From: Lytechinus pictus
Taxonomy: Eukaryota
DNA length: 64,000 bases
Direction of reading: 5' to 3'
Assembly (NCBI RefSeq): GCF_037042905.1
Contig: NC_087247.1
Coordinates: 29,202,001-29,266,000, forward strand
Positions 27,970 through 61,047 of the stretch are shown piece by piece; the first letter of the stretch is position 1; every line of letters starts with the position of its first letter. The translations under genes were made by a program, and so were the position numbers. The notes beneath the pieces were generated by a model, which was not told the origin of the DNA, made no database searches, and saw nothing but the letters and a program-made list of their open reading frames with translations.

Positions 27970-28173
27970 AATCTGAAGGAACGTGCACAGTGCCCTCCTA
28001 TTCGTTTCCTCTCAACACGACATCGCCTAACTATTGTGCAGCCGGGTCCGAGGTCGAACCCCTCACCGAGTGCACGTACGACTGCGATCAGACGGGGTAT
28101 ATTCTGGACGGCGAGGCCACGACGACGTGCTTGATCGTCGGAACATTCTCATCGAACTCACCGACATGCAGAG
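27970..28173 (+). CDS. aGPCR exon: Sushi/CCP domain (6-Cys type), phase 1-1
   Basis: ctaacAG|AATCT...AGAG|GTatga, 204 bp; [48 protein letters not shown]. Confidence 0.88.
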
Positions 28174-31100
28174 GTATGATTTAGANNNNNNNNNNNNNNN
28201 NNNNNNNNNNNNNNNNNNNNNNNNNNNNNNNNNNNNNNNNNNNNNNNNNNNNNNNNNNNNNNNNNNNNNNNNNNNNNNNNNNNNNNNNNNNNNNNNNNNN
28301 NNNNNNNNNNNNNNNNNNNNNNNNNNNNNNNNNNNNNNNNNNNNNNNNNNNNNNNNNNNNNNNNNNNNNNNNNNNNNNNNNNNNNNNNNNNNNNNNNNNN
28401 NATGGATACATAGACATATATATTGATTGATTAATATATGGGCATGATTGAACGGAGAGAGAATGCAGATAGATTAATGGATATACATGGTAGGGATTGA
28501 CATAAAGAAAGATGAGCAGGGTCGAAAAGAAAAGGGATGAAAATCTTTCATCATTCTATCCTCTAAATGCCTCTATTTATGCTTGCAAGCATGTAATATC
28601 GGAGTAACCCCCTCCCCTGCTCGTACCTATCCTTTTGCATGTTTTGTCGAATTTGTTCTCGACAACAGTCTCGTAAGACGGACAGAGAACAAGAGGCCAA
28701 CATGATGCCAAATGAAAATAATTGGCATGATTCGAAAAGCATTGTGGGAAATTGTGGTACTTTGAGCTGGCAAAAAAACGCATAACCTTCATTCTCCTGT
28801 AGTATTTGTCGCAAACCGCTTTTCCATGTAATTGCTTCTAGCAAAGTGAAGTTTCGAATGAAATTTAGAAATTACGAACGGCATGCATGACAGCATGAGA
28901 ATTTTGTAAAATTTTGTTTGATCAAATTTAAATGAAACTGATTTACTATTATGAAGTTACTTTAGTTGGTGTAAGACAACATAAAAACTAATATTTTATA
29001 GAGACAGTATATAGGGGTTGTCATTGTTATCATGACAATGACAATATTTTGTTGCCAAAATATGGGTTTGAAAACATCAACTTTTCACATTATCATAGCA
29101 GTCATATAAATTGAAGGATTTTCAAAAATAATATTAGCAAAGTTCGTGTTTGTTGAAAGTAGAGTACTAGAAATCATGCTGTTCTTTGCAGTGCAGTTGT
29201 GTTATTCAAGCTTGCATGCGCTTTTTCCCGCTTCCTGAAAGTATCACTTAGAGTTTTGCAAAATAGATGTTGTTGATGGATAATTTATATCACTGTCCGA
29301 ATGTGTATGATTTGTGGGCGTGGTAGCTTGAGCTTTCTATTTTCAATACTCCCCCCACACACACACACTCCTGCAACCCCACTCACCCTCACCGTCGTCG
29401 TCCAGATATCGACAGCCCTACGATCTCGTGCCAGGACAACATCACGACGTCGACCGACCCAGGGTTGAACTACGCCACCGTGATCATCGCCGATCCCGTT
29501 GTTGAGGATAATTCAGGGGACATCAAACTGAACCTACCCGACTCCTACCGTGTCTTCATCGGGGTGTCGGTCGTTCGCTTCGAGGCCGTGGATGATGGCG
29601 GGAATAGTGCTGCATGCTCTGTGTTTGTTACTGTCGAAGGTATTCTTGCATGCAAAAGCATCATCTTTTCTTGTCGCACAGACGTTGTTGATATAAGTAG
29701 GTTGCAAACTAAGGATAGAGAAAAAGAGAGCGAAAAAATACTTTGTGTTTAGTTTGAGACATTAGGCCAAATACAAAAAAAAAAATCGCTTGCAAGATTT
29801 TGCTTGAAAACCTATATACGCATGAGATCTGCAGTTGCTTACTTTTTCTTCAAGTATGTCATGTGAGCTTGAGCTCTTTGCTTGAGCGTTACATTAAGAA
29901 AAAAAATAGTCACAAATTTAAAGGTTCACGAAAGTAGAAGTGGACTTTACTTGAATAACTTTAAAAGAAAGTAATAATTTAACATTTTAAAAGCAATTCT
30001 ATACCCCAAGAAGATTGACGGCTTCCTCCTACCTGGGTGTATAAGGAAGCTATTTGATTCTGGTGGGGATCAAAAATAAAAATAAAGTATGTCACTATGT
30101 CTTTGGCTATTAAAAATGAAATCTATTCGCATTGACATGACCATGGCGACTGCTATTGTCAAATCCAAGGGCAAAGCTAGCTTATGGCAAGGGAAATACC
30201 TAAATTTACTAATCTAAATAGATTCTTTACGTGTACTCAGTACTCACTTAGAGCTAGCATTTGCTTTAGATTTTAGCATCAGATAAAATATTAAAGGTAT
30301 GTTACCATCTACCGTGGCTAACAAGAGTTTACTTTTCAAGCAATTACTTGATTTTATGGATACCGATTCAAGCAAGAGACGAAAAAGCATTGTTGTACTT
30401 TTTCAAAGAATATTCAATTGTTTGCACAACTTCCAATAATCCATTTTATAATGTTGAGAATCTTAAACTTTCGTTGTCATTTATAAGGACGGAATCAAAA
30501 TATAAATCAGTAAGAATGAAATTTCCGAACTCTTCTATCCAGAGATGAAAAGTCAAATATTGGGGGAAAAATCATTCTCTACAAATGTAAATCTGAAGTA
30601 CTATCGGTGTTCATAAGCGATAAGCAAATATGGATTGAGAAATCTCAAGTGCTAAAAAGGTTTTGACATACACAATTAATCTAGAGGCGGCGATCCGGGG
30701 GGCGGAGGTCACAGTGCCTCCCCCCACTTTTTGAAGCACTGAAAATGTGCCCTTTTTATGCAAGAAAGATGCCCCTCACGTACGTGTACTGTTGAACTGT
30801 GCCCCTTTCCCCTGAGAAGGACCCATTCTATGTGTCAGCAAGTGCCCCTTGCCTTCCTGTAAGTGCCCTTCTTGAATCAGAGCCCCTTTTTACCCAAGAA
30901 AAGTGCCCCACACGAACATGTTCTCTGCCCCTTTCACCTGAACGAGTGCCCCTTTGAAACAAGAAAACAATATTCTCATTTTTATATGTTACTACTTATA
31001 AAGGAAAAAAAACTTGTAAGAATAATCCTACGTGCCTTAAGTTTCATGAATTATGTGAGTTAGGTAAATAAGCAGTGGCGCACAGATAGAAAAAAAAGAG

Positions 31101-34100
31101 AAAAGGAAAGAGAGAAGGGTAAAATGTAATATTATTTTCTGAATATTATGTCAACATTTTTTTTGGCTCATTACACCACTGTAGATAATTCTTTTTTTTC
31201 TTTGTTTTAAGATAGTGCCCTTTTTGAAAGAAAAGGTGCCCTCTTTTCCCTGTGCCCCACACTTTCAACTTTGCTCCGCCGCCCCTGAGTTAATCATTAA
31301 AAAATATTGCTTTTTGAGTCCCAACTTGTGAGGATCTATTAGTTTAGTTTGTATACTTTCTGTTAGGCGTTTGCTTACAGTTTGCTTGATATCCCTTTAT
31401 ATTTTCTTCTTAATGTGTGTCTTAAAACGAAGATTGATAACTTAAACTATCCTTTTATTCCCTGTTTTATTGTTTTTTTTCCAAATTTACAAATACTTTT
31501 TCTTCTGTTTTATGTTAAAGAATTACACTTTGTATTTGAGTCATGCCGATTTGCAACCGTTTTTTGTTGTTGTTTTGCTACATATTGCATGTCTATACTA
31601 TTATTCCACCGGAAATTCATTTAAATGTCACAGAAATCCACTTGAAAGACTCTGTGGATCATAATATACCTAAATATATGATTTAAATTATTTATTTTTC
31701 TTATAGCCTTAGTGATTTTTAGGTATCACTGCATGTATTGGAATATAATTCTAATTGCATTTTTTCTGAAATAAATGACATCAAATATTGTTGGGCCTAT
31801 TCAGCATTTTTATCAAGTCGACCAATTATCGTTTCATTTGATATTATTAAGAGGTTATGCCGTATATATCCAGGGAAAAACACTTTCAAGAAGGAATCGC
31901 AAGTGTTAAGATTTCTCAAAATAATTTTAACAAGTGATTAACATTTTACATCTTAATAAACAGTAATAGATGGTATTTTGCTAAATCAAAAGCAACATAG
32001 TGAAGTTCTTATAGGGCCAGGCGTCCAGAAGTATGGTACCCCGCCCCTATCCCCTCCCCATCTACCCTTAATATTCTAAAGCATATCTATGATTCCCCTT
32101 CTTTCAGACACGGAGCCACCTAGCCTCTCCTGCTTAGGTACACTAAACGTCACCAACGATCCAGGACTCAACTACGCAGTGGTTACCTGGGATGACATTG
32201 AGATCGAAGATAATTCCGGACAGTTCGTCAGCAACGGTCCCAGCTACCCGTCGGGGACAAAGTTTCCCATTGGACAGACCACAGTGCAAGTCTCTGCTTC
32301 CGACTTGAGTTCCAACATCGGGACCTGCTCCTTCGTCGTCGTTGTTCGTGGTAATGTTTATATTCCTCAGTTATGTAGCTATATATAGCATCTACGTGAG
32401 GAGATGGCAATATATTTTATTGTCGACTTAACAACATTACGTGATATATTTATATTAGTGCCAAGTTGATTTAAAAGTTGACATGGCGAGATATTCCCTT
32501 ACCAGGTAGACTTGTAAAAGGTTACATGTCATCATAGGGAGTTACGTTATCTAGTGTAACTTGTCATATCAATTACATACACCGACTCCAGCTGGAAAAC
32601 TGGACTTCTTTCTATCAGGAATTTGTCAAAATAAACGGCCAGTCTTTAGATTAATTACAGGTTTTTACTCTGTACTGTTAATATATATAACCGAGAACAT
32701 GGTCATCATTGATCAGGCCAACACTATTGATAAGACCTACAAAGTCATCAGTATTTTTTTTCAAACACTTAGGCTTTCCTTTGCAACAACGAAGGAAGAA
32801 AAAATATGTTAATTAACAAAGTTGCAATTCTTTTAGCTCGAAGAGACCGTATCAGTAAGTGTCTTGTGTTATACTTTCACAAGTTTCCTCACAAATCAAA
32901 TTGTTGCATCAGGATAAAAGAAAAGAATCTCACAAAAATAAGACAATTAATGTTTAGTGATCCCTTCACTCTCCAGATGTCGAACCTCCTACTCTCATCT
33001 GTGCTGAGGACTTCACCACCCCCACCGATCCCGGTGCCTTCTACGCTGACGTAATGATCACCCCACCCACTGTCCAAGACAACTCCAACCCTCTTATAAA
33101 CCAGAGCGAGGCATACCCAGTCAGACTCGTTATAGGGTCCTCTGCCATCACTTTCAGTGCCAAGGATGGCGCGGGCAACCTGGCCGAGTGTACTGTGGTT
33201 ATCACAGTCTTAGGTAATTCAGAGAACTCCGAGAGAACTCCCTGAACGTAACTATTTACGAATATTTAGGAATACCTTTGACATCGAAAAATGTATTGTG
33301 ATTGTGATATTTCACTCTTTTCGCAGGTCTTTATGGTAATCATAATAGAATAGATTTGAGATTCTTTTAAAGTAATCGTTTTATTGCAAATCCACTATTA
33401 ATATTTATAAAAGAGAAACATTGAGTAGGGGGTAAAGCAAGGAGAGTTAGAGAGGAGAGAAGGGGAGGGAGGAGACAGAAGAAAAGAAAATAGTGGCTGA
33501 AAATTAAGCTGATGACACCGAAATACATGCATATGTATGTTTAATGTCTTATAGTAATTGCAATGGTGCCCACCTCAGTAGAAATTAATTTTCAAGTCTG
33601 AATTAGCTTCATATTATACAGCGCATTAAAATGACGACTAACGATTCTTTCTTCAACCAGACGTGGAACCTCCAGAGCTGGTGTGCCCAGATGACATCGT
33701 TGTCAGTGCTCAACCCAACCAAGATACGACAGCGGTGCTGTGGGTGGAACCCACCGCGACAGATAACTCTCAGAACCCCGTCTCCACACCAATCGGCGAC
33801 TTCCCCTCCGGGTCGGTCTTCTCGATCGGCACGACACCTGTGACGTTCACGGCCTCTGATGTCTACGGGAATATCGGGAGCTGCATCCTACAGGTGACCG
33901 TCCTTGGTAAGTCTTCTAAATTCACTCTTTTTGTCTGCGGAGTCAAATTTGACTAGGAATGGAGCCACCTCGGACTCAAAGTGACTCAGATTCCCAATGT
34001 ATTGGACATCAGCTGAAAATCTCAATTCTGAGTCAAAAAGCAAATCGGAAACGAGTCATTTTGACTCGGAACAGAGTTGACTCCCGTCTAACGTGTGCCA

Positions 34101-37100
34101 TATCTTATTCAAATTGAAATCATAAGAAAAAAAAGCGTAGAATTATTGTATTTTGCAGATTCATATTGTCTAGTTACGTTCCATATGGGGGATATTGCAT
34201 TTAAAGTAGATTATCATCCAAATAATAGGTCCTAGTTATTCTCAGAGCTGTTTGAATCAGAGATAGTGTACAACAATACTTAAAGAGCTTTTACTATCTA
34301 CCTCTTCTGAGCAGTGAAGCTTTTATTACGTTCAGTAGGCAATTAAAGTGACTCGACATATAGTCAGTGAATTACTGATAGAACAAGACAGCCGAAAGAC
34401 CAATGAGAGACCGTGAATATCTGAAACAGACTGGGTCCTTACAATAGCCTTTCAGTGAAATTTCAATGCTCTCGTATTGATCTTTGACGCTTCCAGACTG
34501 GGCTTTAGTGGTTATCGGGGTCTCTAATGGCTCGCTATTTTTGGAAAGACTCAAAATGGTCTTTTAGCGGTCTTTTGGCAAAACGGCATTTCAGTGGTCT
34601 TTTAGCAGCCTCTCAATGAACTGTCAAAAATCTTCTTTCTATGATCCTTCGACAGTCTTTCAGATGTTCTGTGGAAATCACTGAAAGGCTTCTGAGAGAT
34701 TCTTGAAAGATCACTGAAGAACAGTGAATTTCATCTAAAGATTGCCGAAAAATCTTTTGTTGCATACAAGATCTCCTAAAAACAATTGAAACTCTATTGG
34801 AAGACTATAAAGAACACTGTAGAACGAGTCTAACTCAGCAAGACGAAAAGTATCGGTCAGTCTTTTTTCTAGAAGTGCTTGGAAAGTCTTTCAGAGTTCT
34901 TTCATCAGTCTATCAGTTTTTCGGAGTTACTGCAGTTCCTTTCAAAGATCTCTGGTAGTGTGCCAGATTATCTTCCAAAAGTCTTATTGATCTCTCGGTA
35001 AACGTTCAGCCGTTTGCAAGATCCTAAGGTAATCTTGCTGAAAATGCTGGGGTTTTTTTTGTCTTTGAGCAGTCTTTCGGGGGTTTTCAGAGGCATTCCA
35101 CAGAGATTCAGTGATTTTGAGGACTTCTGAAAGACATTTAAAGTGTCTCCATCTTGTATAATATGGGCCTGATTTATAGCCTACACAAGGCCGTAAATTT
35201 TCCGTTGCAAGCTTAATCTACATCTACCTAAGACGTTCTATAGACACCTAAATAATGGACAAGATTTACATTTCATAATTTTCTAGGTACCCTTTATTGG
35301 AGTAATTATTTTTGCAAACATTTTGTAATTTTATTGAGTATTAAGGCTCGAATGAAGTGTATACCATCTTTCCCAATGCAGATTTTGACGAGTGTGAGAC
35401 TGTGTTTAATCAGTGCAATGGGAATGCCGAATGTACCAATACTCCAGGGGGCTACACGTGCCAGTGTAATGCTGGTTATAGCGGTGACGGGTTCACCTGC
35501 CTAGGTATGTAAAAAGGAGTTATCGCCCCGCCACGCACGACGGATTCAAGAACATAGAAAATGTATTGAAAATGTTTGTCAAATGACAATGAGCCGTTGG
35601 AGGTCTTTGTCAAAAATTATTGTGGAACCGGAACAGCAGTTTCGTCCTTAGTTTCAGAGCTGACGAAAAATTGTAAATATGCCGTTTGTCTAGAGTCCAG
35701 GACGAAACTGCTGTTTTGATTCACCGATTTTTGACAAAGACTTCGTGGTTGTTCATTGTCGTGCAGGGTATTAGACAATACAATTTCTATGTTCTTGAAT
35801 TTTTCGTGAGTCGTGGAGCTAAAACTTGCTAATGACTTAATATCTTATCTCCCACTTTCCTGGTATATAAGCAGATATCGTGAATACCCATATGCTCTGC
35901 TATCAATTTGATCTTAATGCCGTTTGGACTATAGGCTAATTCTCATTCAATCTAAACCCAAGATAACAACAACAACAACATAGTGCCTAATTGGTTCCAT
36001 GACATTTGCTCCAGCGACAAATGCTCCGCTCTAAATTCCACACACTACTGTAATCTAATGACCAACTTCAACCCTGGGTTTAACACTATACCCTACCCTA
36101 AACTGCTAAACCCAACCTTAAACTTAACTTAAAATCCTATTGCAACACTAACCCTACATTTTAGACGAAATGAAGCCCGGAGTAATTGTCAAAGGAGCAA
36201 ATTTCTTGTCACCTCCTAATTGGCCTAGTTTTATTACAAAATAACACGTAAATTTTGATAAAGAAAACATGAAATCAGCAACTTTATCTCTGAAATATTA
36301 TCTAACGATAAAAGAGAGTAATAAATCTTACTTTACTCCCTTTACTATGTTTACTTAGTACTATTAAGTGAGAGATATCATATATTCCTTTCGTTTCCTT
36401 CTCTCCGTCATTCTCTTTTATGCATGGGTGACTTGATTAGCATTTTTATATCATGTTTAATTTCTGGCAACATGGGAGGCTGCTGTAAACATTGTGATGC
36501 GCTTTTCGCCCAAAATTTATTTCTATTATCTACAAAATGACGATCACGAATTCTACTAAATCTTGATTATTCCCTTTGTAGAAATCGATGAATGTACAAC
36601 GAACGATCACAACTGCGACTCCAATGCTGACTGCGTCAACACAGACGGTAGTTTTGAATGTCAGTGCATGGACGGCTACTTGGGTGATGGATTTACATGC
36701 CAAGGTGAGATGATTAATGATAATATCAATGATATAACTATATACTTTCAANNNNNNNNNNNNNNNNNNNNNNNNNNNNNNNNNNNNNNNNNNNNNNNNN
36801 NNNNNNNNNNNNNNNNNNNNNNNNNNNNNNNNNNNNNNNNNNNNNNNNNNNNNNNNNNNNNNNNNNNNNNNNNNNNNNNNNNNNNNNNNNNNNNNNNNNN
36901 NNNNNNNNNNNNNNNNNNNNNNNNNNNNNNNNNNNNNNNNNNNNNNNNNNNNNNNNNNNNNNNNNNNNNNNNNNNNNNNNNNNNNNNNNNNNNNNNNNNN
37001 NNNNNNNNNNNNNNNNNNNNNNNNNNNNNNNNNNNNNNNNNNNNNNNNNNNNNNNNNNNNNNNNNNNNNNNNNNNNNNNNNNNNNNNNNNNNNNNTACTA

Positions 37101-37946: not shown

Positions 37947-37986
<40 letters not shown>

Positions 37987-42039: not shown

Positions 42040-42114
<75 letters not shown>

Positions 42115-51100: not shown

Positions 51101-54100
51101 GGGTGACGAAATCATTTTAAAGACAACCAATAGGGTGACGATATGATTACATGAAAAGCGCATAATTGGGTGACCAAATTATTTCATGAAAAGACAACCA
51201 ATAGGATGACGAAGTAATTTCATAAAAGGACAACCAATAGGGTGACGAAATGATTTCATGAAAGTACAACCAATAGGGTAACGAAACGATTTAATGAAAA
51301 GACAACCGATAGGGTGCCAAAATGATTTTAAATATAACTAATAGGGTGACGAAATGATTTCATGAAAAGACAGCTAACAGGGTGGCGAAATAATTTCATG
51401 AAATAACAACCTATATGGTGACGAAATTATTTCATCAAAAGACAACCAATAGAATGACGAAGTAATTTCATAAAAGGACAACCAATAGGGTGACGAAATG
51501 ATTTCATGAAAGTACAACCAATAAGGTAACGAAACGATTTTATGAAAAGACAACCAATAGGGTGCCAAAATGATTTTAAATATAACAAATAGGGTAAGGA
51601 AATGATTTCAAAGACAACAAATATGATGATAAAATGATTTCAAAGACAACAAATATGATGATAAAATGATTTCAAAGACAACAAATATGATGATAAAATG
51701 ATTTCAAAGACAACAAATATGATAAAATGATTTCAAAGACAACAAATATGATGATAAATGATTTCAAAGACGACCAATAGGGTAACGAGATGATTTCATG
51801 AAAAACAGCCAATATGGTGGCGAAATGATTTCATGAAATCACAACTAATAGGGTGACGAAATGATTCCAAAGACGACCAATAGGGTGACGAAATGATTTC
51901 AATAAAAGCGAATAATTGGGTGAAGAAATTATTTCATGAAAAGACAACCTAGAGGGTGACGAAATGATTTCATGGAAAGACAACCAATAGGATGACGAAG
52001 TAATTTCATAAAAGGACAACCAATAAGGTGGCAAACAATTTCAAAAACAATCAATAGGGTGACCAAATGGATTTACACAAGACAAATAGGGTGACAAAAG
52101 AGATTTCAAAGACAAGCAATAGGGTGACGAAGTTATTTCAAAGACTATCAATGGGGTGACGAAATTATTAAAAAAACAACCAATAAGGTGACAGAATGAT
52201 TTCAAAGGCAGCCAATAGGGTGACTAAATGATTTCAAAAAACAACCAATAGGGTGACCAAATGGGTTTAAAGACGACCAATAGGGTGACGAAATGATTTA
52301 AAATACAACCAATGGGGTGACAGAATTATTTCAAAGGCAGTCAATGGAGTAACGAAATTATTTCATGAAAAGCGCACAATTGGGTGACGAAATTATTTCA
52401 TGAAAAGACAACCAATAGGGTGGCAAAATAATTTCAAAGATAGCCAATAGGGTGACGAAATTATTTCAAAGACAACCAGTAGGGTGAAGAAATGATTTCA
52501 AAGACAAACAATAGGGTGACGAAATAATTTTAAAGACAACCAATAGGGTGACGAAATGATTTCAAAGACAACCAATAGGGTGACGAAATGATTTCAAAGA
52601 CAAAAAATAGGGTGACGAAATGATTTCAAAGACAACCAATAGAATGACGAAATGATTTTACGATCAGTCAACAAATAGAGTGACAAATTTTTTTCATTGA
52701 TATTCAACCAATAATGCATAAACTGTTTAATATGATTTCATAAATAGTTAACAGCCAATACGGTGCCAAATGATTTCATGAAAAGACAATAACCAACAGA
52801 TTCACGAAATGATTTTATGAACAGTCACAACTTATAGAGTGACAAAATTATTTCAATAATATTCAACAAATAATGAATAAACTGTTTGATATTAGTGGTT
52901 TGATTAATGGTCTGCAACCATTAGAATGCGATTATGAATTTTTTATCGAAATAGATATACATATACATCCTTATTGTCCCGAGATGGTGAATGAAAATTG
53001 TTCTTTTATTTATGTTTCTAGTAACGTGTCCTTTTCTCACCTGGATGTCTCCATATGGTGCTGTCAACTTTATAACGGGTCCCGTCGACTCCGAAGCTCT
53101 CTCCACTGGATTGTGTCCTTCATATAAATTAAATCGTATGTACAAGACTCTCATTCCTCATTTCCTTTCTTTTTATACAAACTCAGTAAATCTCTCGAAT
53201 CCAGTATAGTAGCAGATTCTTTTAAATTACCTGCTTCCATCAATGTCTGCATTTAGCGATTAATATAACAAAAATATTTTTTTTCATTAAGCACACTTCC
53301 TTTTCATCCCTTTCTCAAATTGTAAAGATGATAGCCATGAATTAAAACCCGATAGATTCCAGATTAATAGAAGCATAATTACCCACCCAAAACTTTAAGC
53401 TTGTTCTTACACTACTACAGACTGATAGTAGATCATCAAGGAGGCTTTCTTTAAAAAAAAATGTGTTTAGATATATCCCCTGTTTGTTTTGCCGTGAGTT
53501 TGATATGGCCAAACTACACTTTCAAATAACAAAGAAAAGAAACAGTGATTGGACGGTCTTTTCTTGTTAGTTTTATTCATGTCATCATGTTTGGTTTTAT
53601 TATATGTCTAGATGGCCAGCCGATTGGTAGGGCTCTTTGTGTAGGAGATGGATTGTCACCGAGCTACTGGGATCCTGCGGATAACTGTGGAAGAAACCTG
53701 ACAGCCGACGAACAACTTATTCTGCTAGAAGAGGTAGATTTCTCATAAATGCCTTTTCTATTATTTCGGCGGTAGTATGTAGTTGTACTTTTCATTTGAC
53801 ATTTCACTATACATAAACGCTTTAGTAATGCAAACACATAGAATTAAGATTTTTTTTTATGACGAATATTGCAATTTGTCATGATTTCTTTCCACTAAAT
53901 TGCTTGAAGCACATTTACACGTTCACCCGTTTTCTATTTTCAGTGCATGTAGATAATTAAAGATTTAATTCGTTAGTTGCTTTCCAGTGGTGACAAAATC
54001 GGACAATATAAGCTACTATATACATTATTCTAATGCTGAGTAATGTATTGAAAATTAAAATGACTGTATCAGACATGTAATAGGAGGAAATGCTCGATTT

Positions 54101-57100
54101 TTTAATTTTGTACAACAGCCTATTGGAAAAAGTCGCCTCGATCGTCACCCCGCCTGCGAATAGCAGCGTAAAAATGGCAGATGACGTTGAGAACTCAACA
54201 ATATCCTTGACTTTCAAACCGTTATTAACATTGTGGAAGAAACATGAGCTATTCACGATGTGGTTTAATTTACTATTGTGATTTTAATTTAAGACTCCAG
54301 TAACGATCGATAACGTTGCCGACATCGCCGAATCTACCTCTGAGTTGACGTCAAGTAGCGAGTCATTGACGTCCGATGGAGTCGCTTCTGTATCAAGGTT
54401 GCTTGAAGACATTGCTGAAGCAAGATCACCAGAACCGGCGGTACGTGTTCCCAAACATGCATAGTGTTTATTTAGTTATTCATCTTTTTATTCATTTATT
54501 TTGGTTTTCTCTAGACTGTGTGGTCTCTTCAGTGCATATAAACTGTTTTTCCAGAGATCCCTGATATTTGTATTCGTTTTGAAAATAAATGGGTTCTGTC
54601 TAGGGTAATTTGCTGCAGATCGTTTGCTGTGGTACAGCTCCATGGGAATATTCATTTAAACGGCGCCAAGGAATGTGAAACAATAGGAGGAATGTCAAGA
54701 CGAAAGAAAGTACATTCTTTCTTCTAATCTGTGGTCTTATATGATCCCGTTGCATAACTGAATAAGTTCATTTTTCAATGACAAATGCCCATCTTGAGAA
54801 TTGCTTGACACTATACCACTTTTTGGGAATCGCAGATCAGACTTTATTTGCCAATTACGAGAGATATTTCTGAAATGCTGATGAATATAGTCATTCAAAC
54901 TTTCAATATCCCCAGTATACTTTTTCCAACTCTTTGTTTTATATGATCATAATGTACCTTTTTTTTTTCATATCATTGATTGGTGATATATGTCAAATGT
55001 TGTATGTAATTCAATTATTACATCAAATTAAAGATGCGTTTCTTTTCCAATAAATTTGCTCACTTTCATTTCTTATCGTTTCTTTCCACCGTCCTATATT
55101 TCAACAGGTATGTGGTTTTGTGATAGAAACAGTGCAGAATATTTTGAGCGCTTCACCAGACGAGCTTGCCGGTGCCCAGACTGAGAGCGGAGCGACCAGT
55201 CGTGCTGTAGCCTCCCTAGAGGAACAGCTCTTCATTGTAGATATCTCCGCTTCAAATGGTACATACAGGAGAGTCGAAGAAAATTTAGCTGTTGAGGTAA
55301 TCGTCACCAATATTGTACCCATTTATGAATGAAAAATGTATTGTAAAGAAATTCATAGATGCAAGTAAAAAAAAAAACATCTTTTCAATTCACGAGAGAA
55401 AATTTGTAGTTTCTAAATGCTTGATTTATGGGGAGCGTTTCATGAAAGGATCTGCCGGATATTTTATGCCATCAGGGGGGCGTTTCATCAATATTTTCGT
55501 CCGACAAGTTGTCAGATCTGACAACTTTCCTGGATTCTGATTGGTTGAGAAGCACTGTTACTATAGTAACTGTCGGATAAAATAGGACTTGTCGGATAAA
55601 ACGTCCGAAAAGTCCTTTCATGAAACGCTCCCCAGGTCCTGTTATATCCGACAGTAACCATAGTATGAGTGCTTCTCAGCCAATCATATTCTAGGTAAGT
55701 TGTCCGATCTAACAACATGTCAGACGACAAGTGTTGATGAAATGCTCCCCTGCCCTGTATAAATTTTACCTCTCCCTTTCCGTAAAAAAAATCTTCAAGT
55801 ATTTTAATAATAAGATGTTGATTTATGTTTTACAAGAAATTTTTTTTTCTTGTATTTCATAGTTTATTAATTTTCATATTTGATCTCAAAAGGTGGTTGA
55901 ACTGTCTCCCGAAATACTTCGATCTGGCCTATCCGCCTCCCTTACTGTCAGCGGGGGATCTGACAAAATAGCCGCAGACGACTTCAAACTTCTCGTCGGA
56001 GAAGAAACCGATGTCGATGACGAGCCCGATGCGCTCATCGATCTCCCATCCGAAATAGGCGACGTCATCTCTGCCGGTGACAATGTAAGGTGTTCGTTTA
56101 CCACATTCGCTGATCCCGCGTTGTTCCAATCGCCGAGTCTGGCCGTGAATGAGAATAGTACGGGTCCATATAGGACTGCGAACTCACCGGTTATCTCAGC
56201 AACTGTTGGCGGATCAGTCATTAACGGTTTAACTGAACCGGTTGTTGTCTCGTTCAAACCGCTCAACCCGGTAAGGGAGTTTGTTTGTTTTTTAGTTTAG
56301 TTTACTTCCGCCAATTGTATACATTTTCTTAATGTGATATCATTTTTTTAATGAAGTAAATAAATGAATCAAAGAATTTTTGAAAATAACATTACAAGTG
56401 TTTTCCATATTGCTATTTAATAATTGTTACATGTAGGAGCGTAATTCAATCAATGTAAAGACATAAATACATCACTTGTCAGGAAAGTCCATAGAATTTG
56501 TAGTTTGAAAATGGATATTACATTAACTTTACTCAGCTGAGAGATAAGCGTGTCTCTAAACAACATAATTCAAATATTTATATCCTTATACCCAGTATAA
56601 ACAAGTATAGCTTGTCAAAAAATTCTAGAAAAATGTTCTTGATATTTTGTGCCATAAGTTGAAGAGAGATCAATGAATACGCTGTATTTTGACCAATCCC
56701 GATGCTTCTCTTTTATGATACTAGAACGCTACCAATGCAACCTGTGTATTCTGGGATTTTGAAGCGAATAACGGGACTGGTGATTGGTCAACAGAAGGCT
56801 GCCGTCTGAGCAATACAAGCACTGATTCTAGACCAGTATGCCAATGCGACCATCTTACTAACTTTGCCGTCCTTATGGTAAGTATGGTGATAATTATCTT
56901 TAAACTGGTAGAATATACATGTCATTCAAAATGTATATAGTAGCTAGCCCAATGATCTTAATACAGGAACAGAGTATTATGCCTAATAATTCATTCATAC
57001 CTTTTCTAAAATCTATTTGTGTTAGGATGTATGAGCTCTACATGGAAGATGTGTTTTGTTATTGAAAGTAACATGTAATATAAAGGTTGTTATGTTTTTG

Positions 57101-60100
57101 CCTAATTTATTGTTTATCTATTTGGTGATTGTCGGTTTGTTTCGTTTTTATTTCTTTTATTTTTGTTTTACATTCTGTATTCTTTGTTTATATTCTTGTT
57201 CAGAATCTTATTGATGCATAAAATTCTGATAAAAAGCATGATAGATTATGGATAATGACTATTGCATAAATTATTTATTTTGGAATCACAATATCTCATC
57301 TTCATGTGCCCGACAATATTTCTTAATAATTCCCTATTTTCAATTCTATCCCAATTTCCGCTCTTCTTCTTACACTCTTTCCATACTCTTTCTATTTCTG
57401 CCTATCTCATTTTATGTTTCTTTCAATCTGTTAGGATATTTACGGTGGGTCTACATTGTCTGACAGAGAGGATTTCATATTGGAGATTCTCAGCTATGTT
57501 GGCTGCTCTATGTCTGTTTTTGGACTCGTCATCACCATGATAACGTACCTGAGTAATAGGTCAGTTGATTTGATTCTCATATAAAATAATATACATCATC
57601 GAGGGCATTAGTTGGAATTATACACACGCGGCACATTACCGGTCAATAGAAGTAGACATTAGTACAAGTCATAAGCAAAATTTTGCCTGGTATTACAGTA
57701 GTTATATTAAATGACTGGTGTTTTGATACATTTCAGCCAATTATTTTAATTAGGTTCTAAATCCCCATTTCATTAATGCCTTTCATTCCTTTCTTTATTC
57801 AACGTCATACCCTTTGTAATTTCTAGGAAAACATCGAAAGATCAGAAAGGCAAAACATGCTGATATCTTTTATTTCATCGCACTCTTCTAAAGTTTCAAC
57901 CAAGAGTATTTTTTGTTATTGGTGTTGTTCATCACGTATTATTCATCCGTCTTCTCTGATGAGCCCACCGCATGAAAAGCATGCCCTGTTTTATACAATT
58001 CTTCATATTTAGAGTTTCAGATCATATATTATAATTTATATTCGTAATAATTGATATTCATTAATAATATTGCTGATTTTCTATAGATGCAAATGGATCT
58101 TGACGTTCTGTTTTTTTCCATCATGTTCCATATTATTATCTTAGAAAATTCCGCATGAAGAATCCCAACCAGATCCTGCTGTGTCTCTGTTTCTCCTTGC
58201 TCGGTCTGTATGTCACGTTCTTGACCATGATCGCTCTCGACGCCGAACGAGGCGTGGTCGAAGTCAGTGTCATTCCTTGTAGCATAGTGGCAGGGTTATT
58301 ACATTTCTTCACACTCTCTTCGCTTGCCTGGATGTGCGTCGAGGGATTCAACATGTACCTTATGTTCGTGCGGGTCGTGGATAGTTACGTTTCAAATTTC
58401 ATCCTCAAGGCATCGTTTTGTGCGTGGGGTAAGTAGAAGGATCTAACCCCCCCCCTTAATTTTTCGAAATTTTGAATTTTTGGGGGCCATTAGCAATGTG
58501 ATGATACATAAATGAACTTTACCTTGTGTGAAAAGACCAACTTGCCTCTTTCAAAGTTAGCCCATTGGAGGTAGATTACTTTGCACGTGATTTTTTTTCC
58601 ACCAAATTCCTGATTGACATGAACCAATTAACCAGCATTGTGACATTGATGCTCATAATACTGTTTTTTTTTTTTTCAGGTCTACCTGCCGTGGTGGTGT
58701 TTATTACAGCAGGGGTCACAAGGGATACATACGCACAGACAGACTTGTAAGTCTTCATAAAATAGATGATGATGATTATGNNNNNNNNNNNNNNNNNNNN
58801 NNNNNNNNNNNNNNNNNNNNNNNNNNNNNNNNNNNNNNNNNNNNNNNNNNNNNNNNNNNNNNNNNNNNNNNNNNNNNNNNNNNNNNNNNNNNNNNNNNNN
58901 NNNNNNNNNNNNNNNNNNNNNNNNNNNNNNNNNNNNNNNNNNNNNNNNNNNNNNNTAATGACAATGAGAATAACAGTTATGATGAAGATGAAAAAGATGG
59001 TAGTGGCCAGTGGTAGTGATGATGGAGTTGGTGTTGGTGGCTTGAGTAATGATGGTTATGTCGGTGATGGTGGTCTTGTTGATGGTGGTAGTAGTGGTGG
59101 TGGTGGCGGTTGTGGTGACGATGGTGCATGGTTGAAGGTAATTTACTTAAAGCTAAATTACAGTAGTTGCAGTAAAACACTAATTTCGTGAGAAAGTCTG
59201 TAAAACCAAGGTTAAGTATGACTATATCATCGTGGATCTAGATCTGGTACAGTTACATAAACTGAACTTTGTGAAATCATAAAATCTAAGCTGAAATACG
59301 ATCGCACTGAAGATCGCCAACACAGATAGGCACACGTGGGACATTGTATTATTATTGCTGGAATAAAGACCCGACGGAAGTGACCGAATCCGCGCTTATT
59401 TTGCTTATTTTGCTTATTTCTCAGCAATTACACAATTTCTTCCAGAATCCTTTGGCACATATTTTTTATTCATACAAACAGACACTTGGGTGGTCATTAT
59501 ATTAGATTCTGTAAAAAGTCATTTTAAGATCGTTACCAGAACTGGAATTTACCTTTAACGGTGGTGCACTGGTAGTAATGATGGTATTGATGTTAATGCC
59601 GATAGTGGGTAAATGCGGTGATATCAATTATATATAGAATTTTTAAGGAAATCAGAATAATTTTATGGTAATTATCACAATGCTTGTGCTTGCTGCAATA
59701 TAAGCCTATCTACATTTGCTGTACATAGCTAACAGATTACATCAAACTTTCATCTGTGCATCTTCTTTTCGCAGTTGTTTTGTTAGTCTCTGGCCCCAGG
59801 TTGGTGGTCTTTTGATACCAATCGGTCTCATTCTCCTCTTCAACGTCGTCGTCTTCGCGCTGGTAATGAAACGACTCACCAAGACAGTCAGAGGTAAACA
59901 ACAGAACGAGAAGGCAGAGCGACGTCAACGAATACGACGATTCCAAAACGCCATAAGCATCCTCCTCCTCATGGGTAGGTGACGGGCATTTTAGAATCCG
60001 TCTCAATCATCATTCTCGTGAAACAGATTTTTTTGAGCGTATGAATATCTTTTTTTTTCCTACCCGGTGCATTACCTCATAAATCTGTTATGAAAGTACT

Positions 60101-60718
60101 TCTTTTCGTATTTATCTTCCTCTATTGTTGAGAAGTCTGTGCTTCATTTTGTCCCCCAGGACCTGTATTTTTTCTTTTTAGCTGACTTTTTAAATGTCTT
60201 CCGCACGTGGGACAACCATGTACACAGATGTTATAATTCGCTTTAACTTTGAACCGGTTGGCATGGAGTATTCAATGTTTCATTATACTGTTATATGGGG
60301 CAAGAACAATCATACGCAATTTCCTCGTTTTTTATTCTGTTGCACAGGACTAACATGGTCGGTGGGCTATCTGTCGTTGATCCAAGCAACCAGCGTGGTC
60401 GTCCAGGGAATCTTCACCGTGCTCAACTCCCTACAGGGTTATTTCATTTTCATGCTCTACTGCGTACGTCAACCTCAGGTTCGACGTCAGTGGCGAGCAC
60501 AATTCAGCTGCTGTCTGCCCGAGTCCCTGCGGGTCTCGCTCGATTCTTCGACGTCGCGGTTCTCGTCGACTGTGAACACGCGGACGACCACGACGTGGAA
60601 ACCAAACAACCAACCCTCCAAGAAAGGTGTGAATACGGTCTCCAAGTTCAATCCGAACTCGGTACCGACGTCGACGACGGAAAATCTAGGCAGTCGGATG
60701 TACAATGATAGGATCTAA
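27970..60718 (+). CDS. Adhesion GPCR (ADGRG/GPR126-like 7TM), Sushi-4xHYR-13xEGF-Ig-SEA-HormR-GAIN ectodomain; 31 spliced coding exons, ~1840 aa, 5' incomplete
   Basis: Exons (listed separately) have AG/GT boundaries with compatible phases and join into one ORF ending at TAA 60716-60718. GPS motif CVFW...W...GC...[13 protein letters not shown]. Family-B 7TM motifs LHFF..SSLAWM.VEG..MY, WGLP, LMGLTW, LNSLQG.FIF. Confidence 0.95.
29406..29639 (+). CDS. aGPCR exon: HYR (hyalin repeat) 1
   Basis: tccAG|...GAAG|GT, 234 bp; [19 protein letters not shown]...DNSG...IG...V.F.A.D..GNSAAC..FVTVE. Confidence 0.92.
30682..31287. mobile_element. hAT-like non-autonomous element with 8-bp TSD
   Basis: AATTAATC|TAGAGGCGGCG ... 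CGCCGCCCCTG|AGTTAATC; many internal GTGCCC(C/T) motifs. Confidence 0.75.
32108..32350 (+). CDS. aGPCR exon: HYR 2
   Basis: ctttcAG|...CGTG|GTaatg, 243 bp; DTEPPSLSC...VTW...DNSG...[31 protein letters not shown]. Confidence 0.95.
32977..33213 (+). CDS. aGPCR exon: HYR 3
   Basis: ctccAG|...TTAG|GTaatt, 237 bp; [20 protein letters not shown]...DNS...[27 protein letters not shown]. Confidence 0.93.
33661..33906 (+). CDS. aGPCR exon: HYR 4
   Basis: aaccAG|...CTTG|GTaagt, 246 bp; [13 protein letters not shown]...W.EPTATDNS...[34 protein letters not shown]. Confidence 0.95.
35382..35504 (+). CDS. aGPCR exon: Ca-binding EGF 1
   Basis: 123 bp, phase 1-1; [41 protein letters not shown]. Confidence 0.93.
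   Translation: MLTSVRLCLISAMGMPNVPILQGATRASVMLVIAVTGSPA
35515..35830. mobile_element. Palindromic MITE, same family as 16621-16926
   Basis: Shares CAAGAACA...AAATGTATTGAAAATG...GTCAAATGACAA and the matching inverted arm. Confidence 0.6.
35993..36213. mobile_element. MITE with GG termini, 8-bp TSD and CCCTAA-like core; decayed relatives at ~11340-11520 and ~48220-48340
   Basis: GCCTAATT|GGTTCCATGACATTTGCTCC ... GGAGCAAATTTCTTGTCACC|TCCTAATT. Confidence 0.65.
36582..36704 (+). CDS. aGPCR exon: Ca-binding EGF 2
   Basis: 123 bp; [41 protein letters not shown]. Confidence 0.94.
37464..37586 (+). CDS. aGPCR exon: Ca-binding EGF 3 (last 3 bp and donor fall in an N-gap)
   Basis: [40 protein letters not shown]; the end is inferred from paralogous exon 39199-39321. 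Confidence 0.88.
37805..37986. repeat. (ATTG)n microsatellite
   Basis: Direct inspection. Confidence 0.9.
38335..38457 (+). CDS. aGPCR exon: Ca-binding EGF 4
   Basis: 123 bp; [40 protein letters not shown]. Confidence 0.93.
39199..39321 (+). CDS. aGPCR exon: Ca-binding EGF 5 (near-copy of EGF 3)
   Basis: 123 bp, donor GTaagt; [41 protein letters not shown]. Confidence 0.92.
39641..39763 (+). CDS. aGPCR exon: Ca-binding EGF 6 (near-copy of EGF 4)
   Basis: 123 bp; [40 protein letters not shown]. Confidence 0.92.
40752..40874 (+). CDS. aGPCR exon: Ca-binding EGF 7
   Basis: 123 bp; [41 protein letters not shown]. Confidence 0.93.
41235..41780. mobile_element. Young GC-rich non-autonomous DNA transposon with a perfect 8-bp TSD
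   Basis: GCTTACTT|CCCGGGGGGGGCACTC ... GAGTGCCCCCCCCCCCCCGGG|GCTTACTT; internal CCG(T/C)TCC(A/G)AG motifs. Confidence 0.88.
41882..42004 (+). CDS. aGPCR exon: Ca-binding EGF 8
   Basis: 123 bp; [41 protein letters not shown]. Confidence 0.94.
42047..42111. repeat. (TA)n microsatellite
   Basis: Direct inspection. Confidence 0.95.
42424..42546 (+). CDS. aGPCR exon: Ca-binding EGF 9
   Basis: 123 bp; [41 protein letters not shown]. Confidence 0.94.
43033..43155 (+). CDS. aGPCR exon: Ca-binding EGF 10
   Basis: 123 bp; [41 protein letters not shown]. Confidence 0.94.
44027..44293 (+). CDS. aGPCR exon: EGF 11 plus Ca-binding EGF 12 (two domains in one exon)
   Basis: 267 bp, phase 1-1; [89 protein letters not shown]. 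Confidence 0.92.
47024..47152 (+). CDS. aGPCR exon: Notch-type EGF 13
   Basis: 129 bp; [43 protein letters not shown]. Confidence 0.92.
47590..47762 (-). mobile_element. tRNA-derived SINE
   Basis: Minus strand: A-box TGGTCTGGTGG and B-box GGTTCGAATC, followed by SINE body; left boundary approximate. Confidence 0.7.
47856..48110 (+). CDS. aGPCR exon: Ig-like domain
   Basis: 255 bp; [17 protein letters not shown]...FTWKK...[16 protein letters not shown] (Ig C-W-DxGxYxC signature). Confidence 0.93.
48732..48841 (+). CDS. aGPCR exon: SEA domain, N-half (phase 1-0)
   Basis: [37 protein letters not shown] (SEA-type Y...L.DPNS..F); donor GTgagt. Confidence 0.88.
49161..49383 (+). CDS. aGPCR exon: SEA domain, C-half with G|SVI motif (phase 0-1)
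   Basis: VNIGLQ...[17 protein letters not shown]...[11 protein letters not shown]. Confidence 0.9.
49570..52860. repeat. Intronic minisatellite of mixed 32- and 36-bp units, roughly 95 copies
   Basis: Consensus GACAACCAATAGGGTGACGAAATGATTTCA(TGAA)AA. Confidence 0.95.
53022..53135 (+). CDS. aGPCR exon: HormR-like domain, N-half
   Basis: 114 bp; [38 protein letters not shown]; phases fit both neighbours. Confidence 0.82.
53612..53733 (+). CDS. aGPCR exon: HormR-like domain, C-half
   Basis: [26 protein letters not shown] (R..C...W...C pattern) then [12 protein letters not shown]; phase 1-0. Confidence 0.85.
54294..54440 (+). CDS. aGPCR exon: GAIN subdomain A
   Basis: 147 bp, phase 0-0; [49 protein letters not shown]. 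Confidence 0.87.
55108..55296 (+). CDS. aGPCR exon: GAIN domain
   Basis: 189 bp; [41 protein letters not shown]...EENLAVE. Confidence 0.9.
55431..55749. mobile_element. Nested pair of same-family MITEs (inner copy 55476-55632, CAG TSD)
   Basis: GGG(A/G)GCGTTTCAT termini occur four times; the inner copy is flanked by CAG/CAG and is inverted relative to the outer. Confidence 0.75.
55893..56270 (+). CDS. aGPCR exon: GAIN subdomain B
   Basis: 378 bp; ...ALIDLPSEI...[10 protein letters not shown]...[23 protein letters not shown]. Confidence 0.93.
56725..56877 (+). CDS. aGPCR exon: GPS motif with HL|T autoproteolysis site and Stachel
   Basis: [51 protein letters not shown]; scissile bond between codons 56854-56856 and 56857-56859. 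Confidence 0.97.
57435..57559 (+). CDS. aGPCR exon: TM1
   Basis: DIYGG...[26 protein letters not shown]; phase 0-2. Confidence 0.94.
58145..58428 (+). CDS. aGPCR exon: TM2, TM3 and start of TM4
   Basis: [19 protein letters not shown]...[33 protein letters not shown]...FCAW; phase 2-1. Confidence 0.96.
58680..58746 (+). CDS. aGPCR exon: end of TM4 and ECL2
   Basis: [22 protein letters not shown]; phase 1-2. Confidence 0.93.
59151..59554. mobile_element. Kolobok-like MITE
   Basis: TTAA|AGCTAAATTACAGT ... ACTGGAATTTACCT|TTAA. Confidence 0.7.
59775..59974 (+). CDS. aGPCR exon: TM5, ICL3 and start of TM6
   Basis: [35 protein letters not shown]...[13 protein letters not shown]; phase 2-1. Confidence 0.95.
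60348..60718 (+). CDS. aGPCR last coding exon: TM6-TM7, helix 8, C-tail
   Basis: GLTWSVGYL...[28 protein letters not shown]...SCCLP...MYNDRI*. Confidence 0.95.
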
Positions 60719-61047
60719 CCTCGATATAATACGCAGTCGAGCGATAAATGCGCAGTATTTTAAGAATGTGCTTTTGGATGACGAAATTACATATAATGCA
60801 TTACACGCGATTACCAACAAATCTGACAATCAAGAAATGAATGTTTGTTATCATTTGATTATTTGATCATCCAAATGGATGGTATATCTTACAAAGCTCA
60901 ATATTCATGCTAAAATGTATTTACCATAATAATCTAAGGCTATTATAAAAAAGTGAAGTGATTATTGTGCATATTGCGTGGGAGAATTATTTCAACAAAA
61001 TGCATCGAAATAGGCATATCTACTTAACAAAAGTCAATCATTAAAAA

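What the first reader, a model, noticed from the sequence alone, without database searches (positions are those of the whole stretch)
27970..60718. Giant mosaic adhesion GPCR: Sushi-4xHYR-13xEGF-Ig-SEA-HormR-GAIN-7TM
Seen: 31 in-frame exons give this domain order. Known: SEA-HormR-GAIN on this type of 7TM is the ADGRG6/GPR126 layout; Ca-EGF arrays typify ADGRE; Sushi+HYR occurs in SRPX/SVEP1; HYR is the repeat of the echinoderm matrix protein hyalin. I know of no vertebrate aGPCR that combines these. Inference: a long, acidic, Ca-stiffened stalk presents a HYR/Sushi tip that could tether to the hyaline layer or apical matrix and convert tension into G-protein signalling. HYR-bearing aGPCR models may already exist in ambulacrarian genomes, so novelty of the exact architecture is unconfirmed.
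Basis: partly seen in the sequence, partly recalled or inferred. Interest (0 to 1): 0.85.

Follow-up and report, generated by a model that had tools for sequence, protein, structure and literature searches.

The report
Sea urchin HYR-EGF adhesion GPCR gene

Summary
From 27970 to 60718 (+ strand) 31 exons with AG/GT borders and matching phases give one open frame. A 32nd exon upstream (5572-5647) carries the signal peptide. The domain order is signal peptide, Sushi/CCP, 4 HYR, 13 EGF (11 with the Ca-binding consensus), Ig, SEA, HormR-like, GAIN/GPS (HL|T, Stachel TNFAVLMD), 7TM.

Five gaps are intronic. The gap at 37584 removes the last 3 nt and the donor of one EGF exon; all neighbouring exons are phase 1-1, so the frame holds.

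A 5137-nt RNA contig and stranded reads join EGF13-Ig-SEA-HormR at my exon borders, so this is one gene.

The protein matches Lytechinus pictus XP_063952015.1 (LOC129257488, "uncharacterized protein") exactly except at its N-terminus. Orthologues exist in L. variegatus, S. purpuratus and Diadema.

The GAIN+7TM part is closest to ADGRG6 and ADGRG2. A confident model of SEA-HormR-GAIN best matches the zebrafish Adgrg6 ectodomain.

HYR-bearing adhesion GPCRs occur in several echinoderm lineages and are reported in choanoflagellates.

The likely mechanism is an ADGRG-type, tethered-agonist mechanosensor. Binding to the hyaline layer is untested speculation. Verdict: a new variant of a known kind, of moderate interest.

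The parts
5572..5647 (+). Coding exon 1: start codon and signal peptide (MDTNIFIKITFSWIVTFVIMTSSVR), phase-1 donor G|gtaaga
   Evidence: tblastn with the S. purpuratus orthologue N-terminus, E 1.4e-7. Sequence read. 24 of 25 residues identical to L. variegatus.
13107..13143 (+). Alternative first coding exon used by the RefSeq model (MWAETKLKVDEV, no signal peptide), phase-1 donor
   Evidence: 100% tblastn match to the N-terminus of P0138. Donor G|gtatgg. Its use was not tested with reads.
27970..28173 (+). Sushi/CCP exon, phase 1-1. An alternative acceptor 9 nt downstream (27979) matches the S. purpuratus form.
   Evidence: Pfam Sushi 19.2 bits. AF2 model pLDDT 89.6 with CCP fold, TMq 0.73-0.84.
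29406..29639 (+). HYR 1 exon, phase 1-1
   Evidence: Pfam HYR E 3.6e-10
32108..32350 (+). HYR 2 exon, phase 1-1
   Evidence: Pfam HYR E 1.7e-14
32977..33213 (+). HYR 3 exon, phase 1-1
   Evidence: Pfam HYR E 1e-9
33661..33906 (+). HYR 4 exon, phase 1-1
   Evidence: Pfam HYR E 4.5e-16
35382..35504 (+). EGF 1 (cbEGF), 123 nt, phase 1-1
   Evidence: Pfam EGF_3 4.9e-11, EGF_CA 3.5e-9. cb consensus.
36582..36704 (+). EGF 2 (cbEGF)
   Evidence: Splice sites and frame. tblastn to the orthologue. cb consensus.
37464..37583 (+). EGF 3 (cbEGF). The last 3 nt and the donor are lost in gap 37584-37802.
   Evidence: 115 of 120 nt identical to exon 39199.
38335..38457 (+). EGF 4 (cbEGF)
   Evidence: 113 of 123 nt identical to exon 39641.
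39199..39321 (+). EGF 5 (cbEGF), tandem duplicate of EGF 3
39641..39763 (+). EGF 6 (cbEGF), tandem duplicate of EGF 4
   Evidence: The 5' end of the RNA contig falls about 43 nt inside this exon by length arithmetic.
40752..40874 (+). EGF 7 (cbEGF)
41882..42004 (+). EGF 8 (cbEGF)
42424..42546 (+). EGF 9 (cbEGF)
43033..43155 (+). EGF 10 (cbEGF)
44027..44293 (+). EGF 11 (no Ca-binding N-terminus) and EGF 12 (cbEGF) in one exon
   Evidence: Pfam EGF_CA 3.2e-18, 2 stretches
47024..47152 (+). EGF 13 (non-Ca-binding, Notch-like)
   Evidence: Pfam EGF 2.9e-8. RNA joint 47152|47856.
47856..48110 (+). Ig domain exon
   Evidence: Pfam Ig_3 3.6e-8. RNA joints on both sides.
48732..48841 (+). SEA, first half
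   Evidence: Weak Pfam SEA E 0.065. AF2 beta-alpha-beta-beta-alpha-beta fold and Foldseek MUC16 SEA TMt 0.63-0.67. RNA joints.
49161..49383 (+). SEA, second half, with G|SVI at the beta2-beta3 hairpin
   Evidence: RNA joint 49383|53022.
53022..53135 (+). HormR-like, first half (corrected exon)
   Evidence: tblastn to the orthologue. Sequence. RNA joint. Fold.
53612..53733 (+). HormR-like, second half
54294..54440 (+). GAIN subdomain A, part 1
   Evidence: Weak Pfam GPR128_GAIN_subdomA on the exon, E 3.2e-5 on orthologue P0001. Helices in the model.
55108..55296 (+). GAIN subdomain A, part 2
55893..56270 (+). GAIN subdomain B
   Evidence: phmmer on 1.84 billion proteins: 29 hits, best 5.6e-57. 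Aligned to the ADGRG6 GAIN.
56725..56877 (+). GPS motif with HL|T and Stachel TNFAVLM
   Evidence: Pfam GPS 2.1e-20. H, L and T invariant in 36 relatives.
57435..57559 (+). Linker and TM1
   Evidence: Pfam 7tm_2 weak. ADGRG6 alignment.
58145..58428 (+). TM2-TM3
   Evidence: Pfam 7tm_2 8.5e-11
58680..58746 (+). TM4
   Evidence: Splice sites. Continuous with orthologues across gap 58781-58955.
59775..59974 (+). ECL2, TM5 and ICL3
   Evidence: Pfam 7tm_2 E 0.001..
60348..60718 (+). TM6-TM7, C-terminal tail and stop codon
   Evidence: 96% identical to S. purpuratus.
60719..62186 (+). Inferred 3' UTR of about 1.45 kb; ATTAAA at 62143
   Evidence: Length arithmetic on the 5137-nt RNA contig and the poly(A) signal position.

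Best explanation
The window holds one expressed gene of Lytechinus pictus (RefSeq LOC129257488). It is the orthologue of S. purpuratus LOC583016. It encodes an adhesion GPCR of about 1865 aa from the echinoderm expansion related to vertebrate ADGRG2/G4/G6.

Shown:
- 32 coding exons.
- Domain order: signal peptide, CCP, 4 HYR, 13 EGF (11 Ca-binding type), Ig, SEA, HormR-like, GAIN with an intact HL|T site and Stachel TNFAVLMD, then a 7tm_2 domain.
- Transcripts join the EGF array to the SEA/HormR part.

Inferred from what is established for ADGRG6 and other adhesion GPCRs:
- The GAIN domain cleaves itself at HL|T, and the two fragments stay together.
- The long, acidic, Ca-stiffened ectodomain binds an as yet unknown matrix or cell-surface partner.
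- Pulling force or a conformational change exposes the Stachel, which activates the 7TM. The G protein is probably Gs, as for ADGRG6 and ADGRG2.
- All Sushi-to-Ig exons are symmetric phase 1-1 cassettes, so splicing can vary the stalk length. S. purpuratus isoform models X1-X9 differ by exact single EGF modules or by HYR1.
- L. pictus carries a lineage-specific tandem duplication of one EGF pair, giving 13 EGFs against 11.
For: - Continuous frame and canonical splice sites.
- Pfam domains.
- RNA: a 5137-nt contig in two runs lies with 0 mismatches on EGF13, Ig, SEA1, SEA2 and HormR1, with GT..AG joints at my borders. Stranded raw reads in two further runs agree.
- Contig length fits the modelled exons from EGF6 to a poly(A) signal at 62143.
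- 100% identity to XP_063952015.1 from 'SEGTC' to the stop codon. Orthologues in L. variegatus (94%), S. purpuratus (80%) and Diadema (66%) have the same architecture.
- Best PDB sequence hits: ADGRG6 5.5e-62, ADGRG2 1.2e-59, ADGRL3 2.9e-50.
- AF2 model pLDDT 88; top Foldseek hit is the zebrafish Adgrg6 ectodomain, 3e-27.
- 7TM tree: the echinoid orthologue clade has support 100/98. The echinoderm set groups with vertebrate ADGRG2/G4 (98/99), apart from latrophilins.
- GPS H-L-T invariant in 36 relatives.
- cbEGF consensus and acidity.
- S. purpuratus isoforms.
Against: - No functional data were found. Literature searches for the locus names gave nothing.
- Cleavage, ligand, G-protein coupling and expression site are all inferred.
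- The link from Sushi/HYR exons to EGF exons rests on the frame and on orthologous gene models, not on reads laid here.
- The RefSeq model starts at a different first exon without a signal peptide.
- The tree lacked ADGRG6, G1, G3, G5, G7 and the D, E and F families, so the subfamily placement is partial.
Confidence: 0.85

Rival explanations
1. The EGF count is inflated. Exons 37464 and 38335 would be redundant copies (alternative haplotype contigs placed in tandem between gaps) of exons 39199 and 39641, so the true gene has 11 EGFs as in L. variegatus and S. purpuratus.
For: - Both extra exons sit on short contigs (488 and 950 bp) bounded by gaps.
- L. variegatus and S. purpuratus isoform X1 have 11 EGFs.
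- The copies are 96% and 92% identical in the exons.
Against: - Flanking intron identity is only 78-90%, with an insertion of about 190 bp in one copy. That is far beyond normal allelic divergence.
- The RefSeq protein of this species has all 13 EGFs, though possibly from the same assembly.
- The RNA contig stops about 43 nt inside exon 39641. That is where 31-mers become shared with exon 38335, which suggests both copies are in the RNA (arithmetic inference only).
Confidence: 0.12
2. One reading: the HYR/Sushi tip binds hyalin or the hyaline layer (apical matrix) of the embryo, and the receptor reports tension in that layer.
For: - HYR is the repeat of hyalin, and four HYR domains are at the tip.
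- The ectodomain is acidic and rich in cbEGF, consistent with Ca-dependent extracellular interactions.
Against: - The HYR repeats are no closer to hyalin-like proteins than to bacterial HYR proteins, 30-40% identity in both cases.
- HYR occurs in many unrelated echinoderm adhesion GPCRs and in choanoflagellate ones. It therefore looks like a generic adhesion module.
- No expression or binding data exist.
Confidence: 0.1
3. Two adjacent genes (a secreted Sushi-HYR-EGF matrix protein and a separate ADGRG-like receptor) have been wrongly fused.
For: Long introns (2.7 kb and 3.6 kb) separate EGF12 from EGF13 and SEA from HormR.
Against: - RNA joints link EGF13, Ig, SEA and HormR.
- No stop codon or start/signal exon lies between them.
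- Four species' independent gene models keep the whole architecture.
Confidence: 0.02
4. The receptor undergoes two autoproteolytic cleavages in series (SEA G|SVI and GPS HL|T), both essential to its function, giving a three-piece receptor.
For: - The SEA fold is confident, and G-S-V sits at the beta2-beta3 hairpin as in cleaved SEA domains.
- GS[VI] is common in the family alignment.
Against: - The S. purpuratus orthologue has G-I-V-V at this place, with no Ser nucleophile. SEA self-cleavage is therefore not conserved even among orthologues.
- In ADGRG6 the SEA domain is cut by furin, not by itself (PMC10425801).
Confidence: 0.3

Closest known systems
ADGRG6 / GPR126 (vertebrates)
   Same: - SEA-HormR-GAIN-7TM core in the same order.
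- Best PDB sequence hit (5.5e-62 over GAIN+7TM) and best structural hit (6v55 ectodomain).
- GPS HL|T and a Stachel of the T-x-F-A/G-V/I-L-M type.
   Different: - The distal part is CUB-PTX in ADGRG6 (PMC10425801). Here it is CCP, 4 HYR, 13 EGF and Ig.
- The HormR-like domain has 4 rather than 6 cysteines and does not reach the Pfam HRM model.
- The SEA domain carries a G|S motif instead of the furin site described for ADGRG6.
S. purpuratus LOC583016, L. variegatus LOC121411452, Diadema setosum orthologue (RefSeq 'uncharacterized protein')
   Same: - Same architecture and 66-94% identity.
- Same signal-peptide exon.
- A clade with 100/98 support in the 7TM tree.
   Different: - 11 EGFs in L. 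variegatus and in S. purpuratus isoform X1, against 13 here (Diadema's 1725-aa protein was not counted).
- S. purpuratus lacks the Ser of the SEA G|S motif.
ADGRE family (EMR/CD97)
   Same: A tandem array of Ca-binding EGF domains on an adhesion GPCR, encoded by cassette exons that can be skipped.
   Different: - The 7TM of ADGRE5 scores far lower (about 108-130 bits against 213 for ADGRG6).
- ADGRE has no SEA, HormR, HYR, Sushi or Ig.
Other echinoderm HYR-bearing adhesion GPCRs (e.g. S. purpuratus SRCR-HYR 'GPR126' models; Amphiura, Anneissia, Diadema models) and choanoflagellate subfamily alpha aGPCRs
   Same: HYR repeats in the N-terminal fragment of a GPS/7tm_2 receptor (bioRxiv 10.1101/2025.04.15.649019).
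   Different: - Different partner domains (SRCR, LDLa, Ig).
- They fall in at least four separate lineages of the 7TM tree, so the HYR modules were acquired by shuffling.
SVEP1 / SRPX (Sushi plus HYR plus EGF matrix proteins)
   Same: Co-occurrence of Sushi, HYR and cbEGF modules.
   Different: These are secreted proteins with no GAIN or 7TM. No specific sequence relationship was tested beyond generic domain similarity.

Membership tests
Adhesion GPCR (class B2) | GAIN domain with a GPS motif immediately before the 7TM | tested here: met
   - Pfam GPS 2.1e-20.
- GAIN fold in the AF2 model matches the GAIN domains of ADGRG6, BAI3, latrophilin and CELSR1.
Adhesion GPCR (class B2) | Secretin-family 7TM (7tm_2) | tested here: met
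   - Pfam 7tm_2 on exon pieces.
- 4.2e-37 over profile positions 4-250 in orthologue P0001.
Adhesion GPCR (class B2) | Autoproteolysis consensus H-L|T/S and a hydrophobic tethered agonist | tested here: met
   The sequence CQCDHL|TNFAVLMD is present, and H, L, T and F are invariant in 36 relatives. Actual cleavage cannot be tested with these tools.
ADGRG subfamily (group VIII) | 7TM groups with ADGRG members rather than other subfamilies | tested here: inconclusive
   - PDB phmmer ranks ADGRG6, G2 and G4 above L, D, E and F.
- The tree groups the echinoderm clade with vertebrate G2/G4 (98/99), apart from latrophilins.
- ADGRG6, G1, G3, G5, G7 and families A-F and V were not in the tree.
ADGRG6 / GPR126 orthologue | CUB and PTX domains at the N-terminus | tested here: not met
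   No CUB or pentraxin hit in any exon or in orthologue P0001. The N-terminus is CCP-HYR-EGF-Ig.
ADGRG6 / GPR126 orthologue | SEA-HormR-GAIN order next to the membrane | tested here: met
   AF2 model pLDDT 88. Foldseek top hit 6v55_A with 490 aligned columns. SEA hits to MUC16 SEA with TMt 0.63-0.67.
Autoproteolytic SEA domain | G|S-V-V-V-type motif with a Ser nucleophile at the beta2-beta3 hairpin | tested here: inconclusive
   G-S-V-I is present at the hairpin in this species and in L. variegatus. G-I-V-V is at this place in the S. purpuratus orthologue.
Calcium-binding EGF array | D/N-x-D/N-E/Q-C N-terminus and the C-x-D/N-x4-F/Y-x-C consensus | tested here: met
   11 of 13 EGFs carry both; EGF11 carries only the hydroxylation consensus and EGF13 neither. 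Pfam EGF_CA.
Sushi / CCP | CCP beta-sandwich with conserved cysteines | tested here: met
   - Pfam is just below the cut-off.
- AF2 pLDDT 89.6. All top Foldseek hits are CCP modules, rmsd about 2 A.
- The conserved Trp is replaced by Phe/Leu, and there is an extra cysteine pair.

The most novel reading that the evidence does not exclude
The echinoid-specific CCP-HYR tip on a variable-length cbEGF stalk forms a dedicated tension sensor for an apical or extracellular matrix component (hyalin or another Ca-dependent matrix protein). Splicing, and in L. pictus exon duplication, would tune stalk length. In Lytechinus a second SEA self-cleavage would add a further force-sensitive break point.
Probability: 0.1. 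Interest if true: 0.65.

Novelty: new variant of a known kind. Interest (0 to 1): 0.35.

Why it matters
- It is a clean, conserved example of how deuterostome invertebrates rebuilt the outer part of an ADGRG6-like receptor by exon shuffling. Every module from Sushi to Ig is a phase 1-1 cassette.
- Stalk length varies by splicing (S. purpuratus isoform models) and by a recent exon-pair duplication in L. pictus.
- L. pictus is a genetically tractable sea urchin. The gene could serve to test how ectodomain length and distal adhesion modules affect tethered-agonist signalling in an embryo.
- It does not reveal a new kind of receptor. The gene is already in public annotation, though unnamed and unstudied.
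- A practical point: the RefSeq model for this species seems to start at an exon without a signal peptide. The conserved signal-peptide exon lies 7.5 kb further upstream.

Tried and rejected
- My first frame-only pick of a 66-nt exon at 52955-53020 was wrong. The orthologue and RNA joints place the exon at 53022-53135 in another frame.
- Pfam on single exons did not detect SEA, HormR or most of GAIN. PDB sequence search of the Ig-SEA-HormR part found only Ig hits. Structure prediction was needed.
- The haplotype-duplicate explanation for the repeated EGF pair is judged unlikely because of 10-22% intron divergence and an indel. It is not excluded.
- Literature searches for the locus names, for 'echinoderm adhesome', and for HYR plus adhesion GPCR in sea urchin found no description of this gene. 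Two hits for 'HYR' were false (hyrax, Hyriopsis).
- The search with the Sushi-HYR region returned mostly bacterial and hyalin-like HYR-repeat proteins. It gave no specific partner or relative outside the orthologues.
- No other gene was seen in the 22-kb first intron or in the flanks. ORFs of 90 aa or more there are low-complexity.
- A weak second match to the signal-exon start at 2785-2823 lacks a hydrophobic core and was not pursued.

Full report
**What is there.**
- The window is AT-rich eukaryotic DNA (35% GC) with seven assembly gaps.
- On the + strand, stop-to-stop ORFs between 27930 and 60718 carry recognisable Sushi, HYR, EGF, Ig, GPS and 7TM peptides.
- Choosing AG/GT sites that keep the frame gives 31 exons from 27970 to the stop codon at 60716-60718, with no internal stop.
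- All exons from Sushi to Ig are phase 1-1. Ten of the twelve EGF exons are exactly 123 nt.
- My first pick for one small exon (52955-53020) was wrong. The S. purpuratus orthologue aligns in another frame, the sequence gives exon 53022-53135, and RNA reads join 49383 to 53022.

**The 5' end.**
- The orthologue's N-terminus matches 5572-5647, MDTNIFIKITFSWIVTFVIMTSSVR, a typical signal peptide. It ends in a strong phase-1 donor.
It is 24/25 identical to the L. variegatus protein.
- The RefSeq model of this species instead uses a 37-nt exon at 13107-13143, which has no signal peptide. I could not test which exon is used.
- Acceptors at 27970 and 27979 are both in frame. The first matches L. variegatus and RefSeq; the second matches S. 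purpuratus.

**Gaps.**
- Five of the six gaps in the finding are intronic.
- Gap 37584-37802 removes the last 3 nt and the donor of EGF exon 37464. I kept these as N/X.
- All neighbouring exons are phase 1-1, so the frame is unaffected.
- The public protein of the same species has the same 13 EGFs.
- The gaps adjoin AT-rich simple repeats.

**Domains.**
- Pfam on exon translations gives HYR x4 (1e-9 to 4.5e-16), EGF_CA/EGF_3, Ig_3 (3.6e-8), GPS (2.1e-20) and 7tm_2 (8.5e-11).
- Sushi was just under threshold. Related modules in paralogues gave an alignment. The model (pLDDT 89.6) matches only CCP modules, with TMq 0.73-0.84 and rmsd about 2 A.
- SEA and HormR were invisible to sequence searches.
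- A model of the 485-residue stretch from SEA to GPS, built on 36 relatives, has pLDDT 88.
- Its best Foldseek match is the full ectodomain of zebrafish Adgrg6 (6v55, E 3e-27, 490 columns). HormR+GAIN structures follow, and the N-terminal 110 residues match MUC16 SEA domains.
- Eleven of 13 EGFs have the Ca-binding and Asx-hydroxylation consensus. The ectodomain has 238 acidic and 33 basic residues.

**One gene.**
- In two RNA runs the same 5137-nt contig lies without mismatch on EGF13, Ig, SEA1, SEA2 and HormR1, with GT..AG joints at my borders.
- Stranded raw reads from two further runs show the same joints, in the orientation expected for a + strand RNA.
- By length, the contig reaches from about 43 nt inside EGF6 to about 62186, just past an ATTAAA at 62143. 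This fits the modelled downstream exons exactly and leaves no room for a hidden exon at the 58781 gap.

**Identity.**
- A phmmer search with the GAIN-B exon found a 1745-aa S. purpuratus protein.
- Further searches gave L. variegatus LOC121411452, a Diadema setosum protein, and L. pictus XP_063952015.1.
- The last of these is identical to my model from 'SEGTC' to the end, so the window is L. pictus.
- All are annotated 'uncharacterized protein'. No paper mentions them.

**EGF duplication.**
- Exons 37464/38335 and 39199/39641 are a tandem pair duplication. They are 96% and 92% identical in the exons and 78-90% in the introns, with an indel of about 190 bp.
- L. variegatus and S. purpuratus X1 have 11 EGFs.
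- I judge the duplication real, with about 12% probability that it is assembly redundancy.

**Family.**
- GAIN+7TM scores best against ADGRG6 (5.5e-62) and ADGRG2, then ADGRL3.
- In a 7TM tree the four echinoid orthologues form a tight clade (100/98). It sits inside a large echinoderm expansion that groups with vertebrate ADGRG2/G4 (98/99), apart from latrophilins.
- HYR-bearing receptors are scattered over at least four lineages of that tree.
- HYR in adhesion-GPCR N-termini is also reported for choanoflagellates (bioRxiv 10.1101/2025.04.15.649019).
- The ADGRG6 layout is CUB-PTX-SEA-HormR-GAIN (PMC10425801). Here CUB-PTX is replaced by CCP-HYR-EGF-Ig.

**Mechanism.**
- Shown: an intact HL|T site and Stachel, invariant in 36 relatives.
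- Inferred: GAIN self-cleavage, ligand- or force-driven exposure of the Stachel, and G-protein signalling as in ADGRG6.
- The SEA G|SVI motif sits at the beta2-beta3 hairpin. The S. purpuratus orthologue has GIVV there, so SEA self-cleavage is not a conserved requirement.
- S. purpuratus isoform models differ by exact EGF modules or by HYR1. This points to splicing control of stalk length.
- Hyalin binding has no support. The HYR repeats are equally distant from hyalin-like and bacterial HYR proteins.

**Verdict.** This is a new variant of a known kind, already present as an unnamed gene model.

Noticed in passing
window 13107-13143 and 5572-5647: The public RefSeq protein of this species starts at a 37-nt exon with no signal peptide (MWAETKLKVDEV). 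The signal-peptide exon conserved in L. variegatus and S. purpuratus lies at 5572-5647. This is either a 5' mis-annotation or an alternative promoter.
   Followed up: partly
window 47690-47760: A short antisense tRNA-derived SINE-like fragment (GATTCGAACCC...) lies in the EGF13-Ig intron. RNA depth there is in the thousands, with many different flanking sequences, so the reads come from other copies in the genome.
   Followed up: partly
window 11578-11647 (+): Rfam tRNA match (37.9 bits) in intron 1 that ARAGORN does not call. It is probably a tRNA pseudogene or a SINE head.
   Followed up: no
window 13578-13673, 37096-37170, 58956-59010: Assembly gaps are flanked by AT-rich trinucleotide-type simple repeats (poly-Asn/Ile in translation). 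This probably explains why the assembly broke there.
   Followed up: no
window 2785-2856: An ATG-GAC-ACC-AAA ('MDTK...') stretch resembles the start of the signal-peptide exon but lacks a hydrophobic core. It may be a decayed duplicate of exon 1 or a chance match.
   Followed up: no
P0139-P0151 (S. purpuratus LOC583016 isoforms): Nine predicted isoforms differ only by exact removal of one to three EGF modules or of HYR1, as expected from phase 1-1 cassette exons.
   Followed up: yes
window 49161-49383 (SEA hairpin): The G-S of the possible SEA self-cleavage site is present in both Lytechinus species. It is G-I in the S. purpuratus orthologue.
   Followed up: partly
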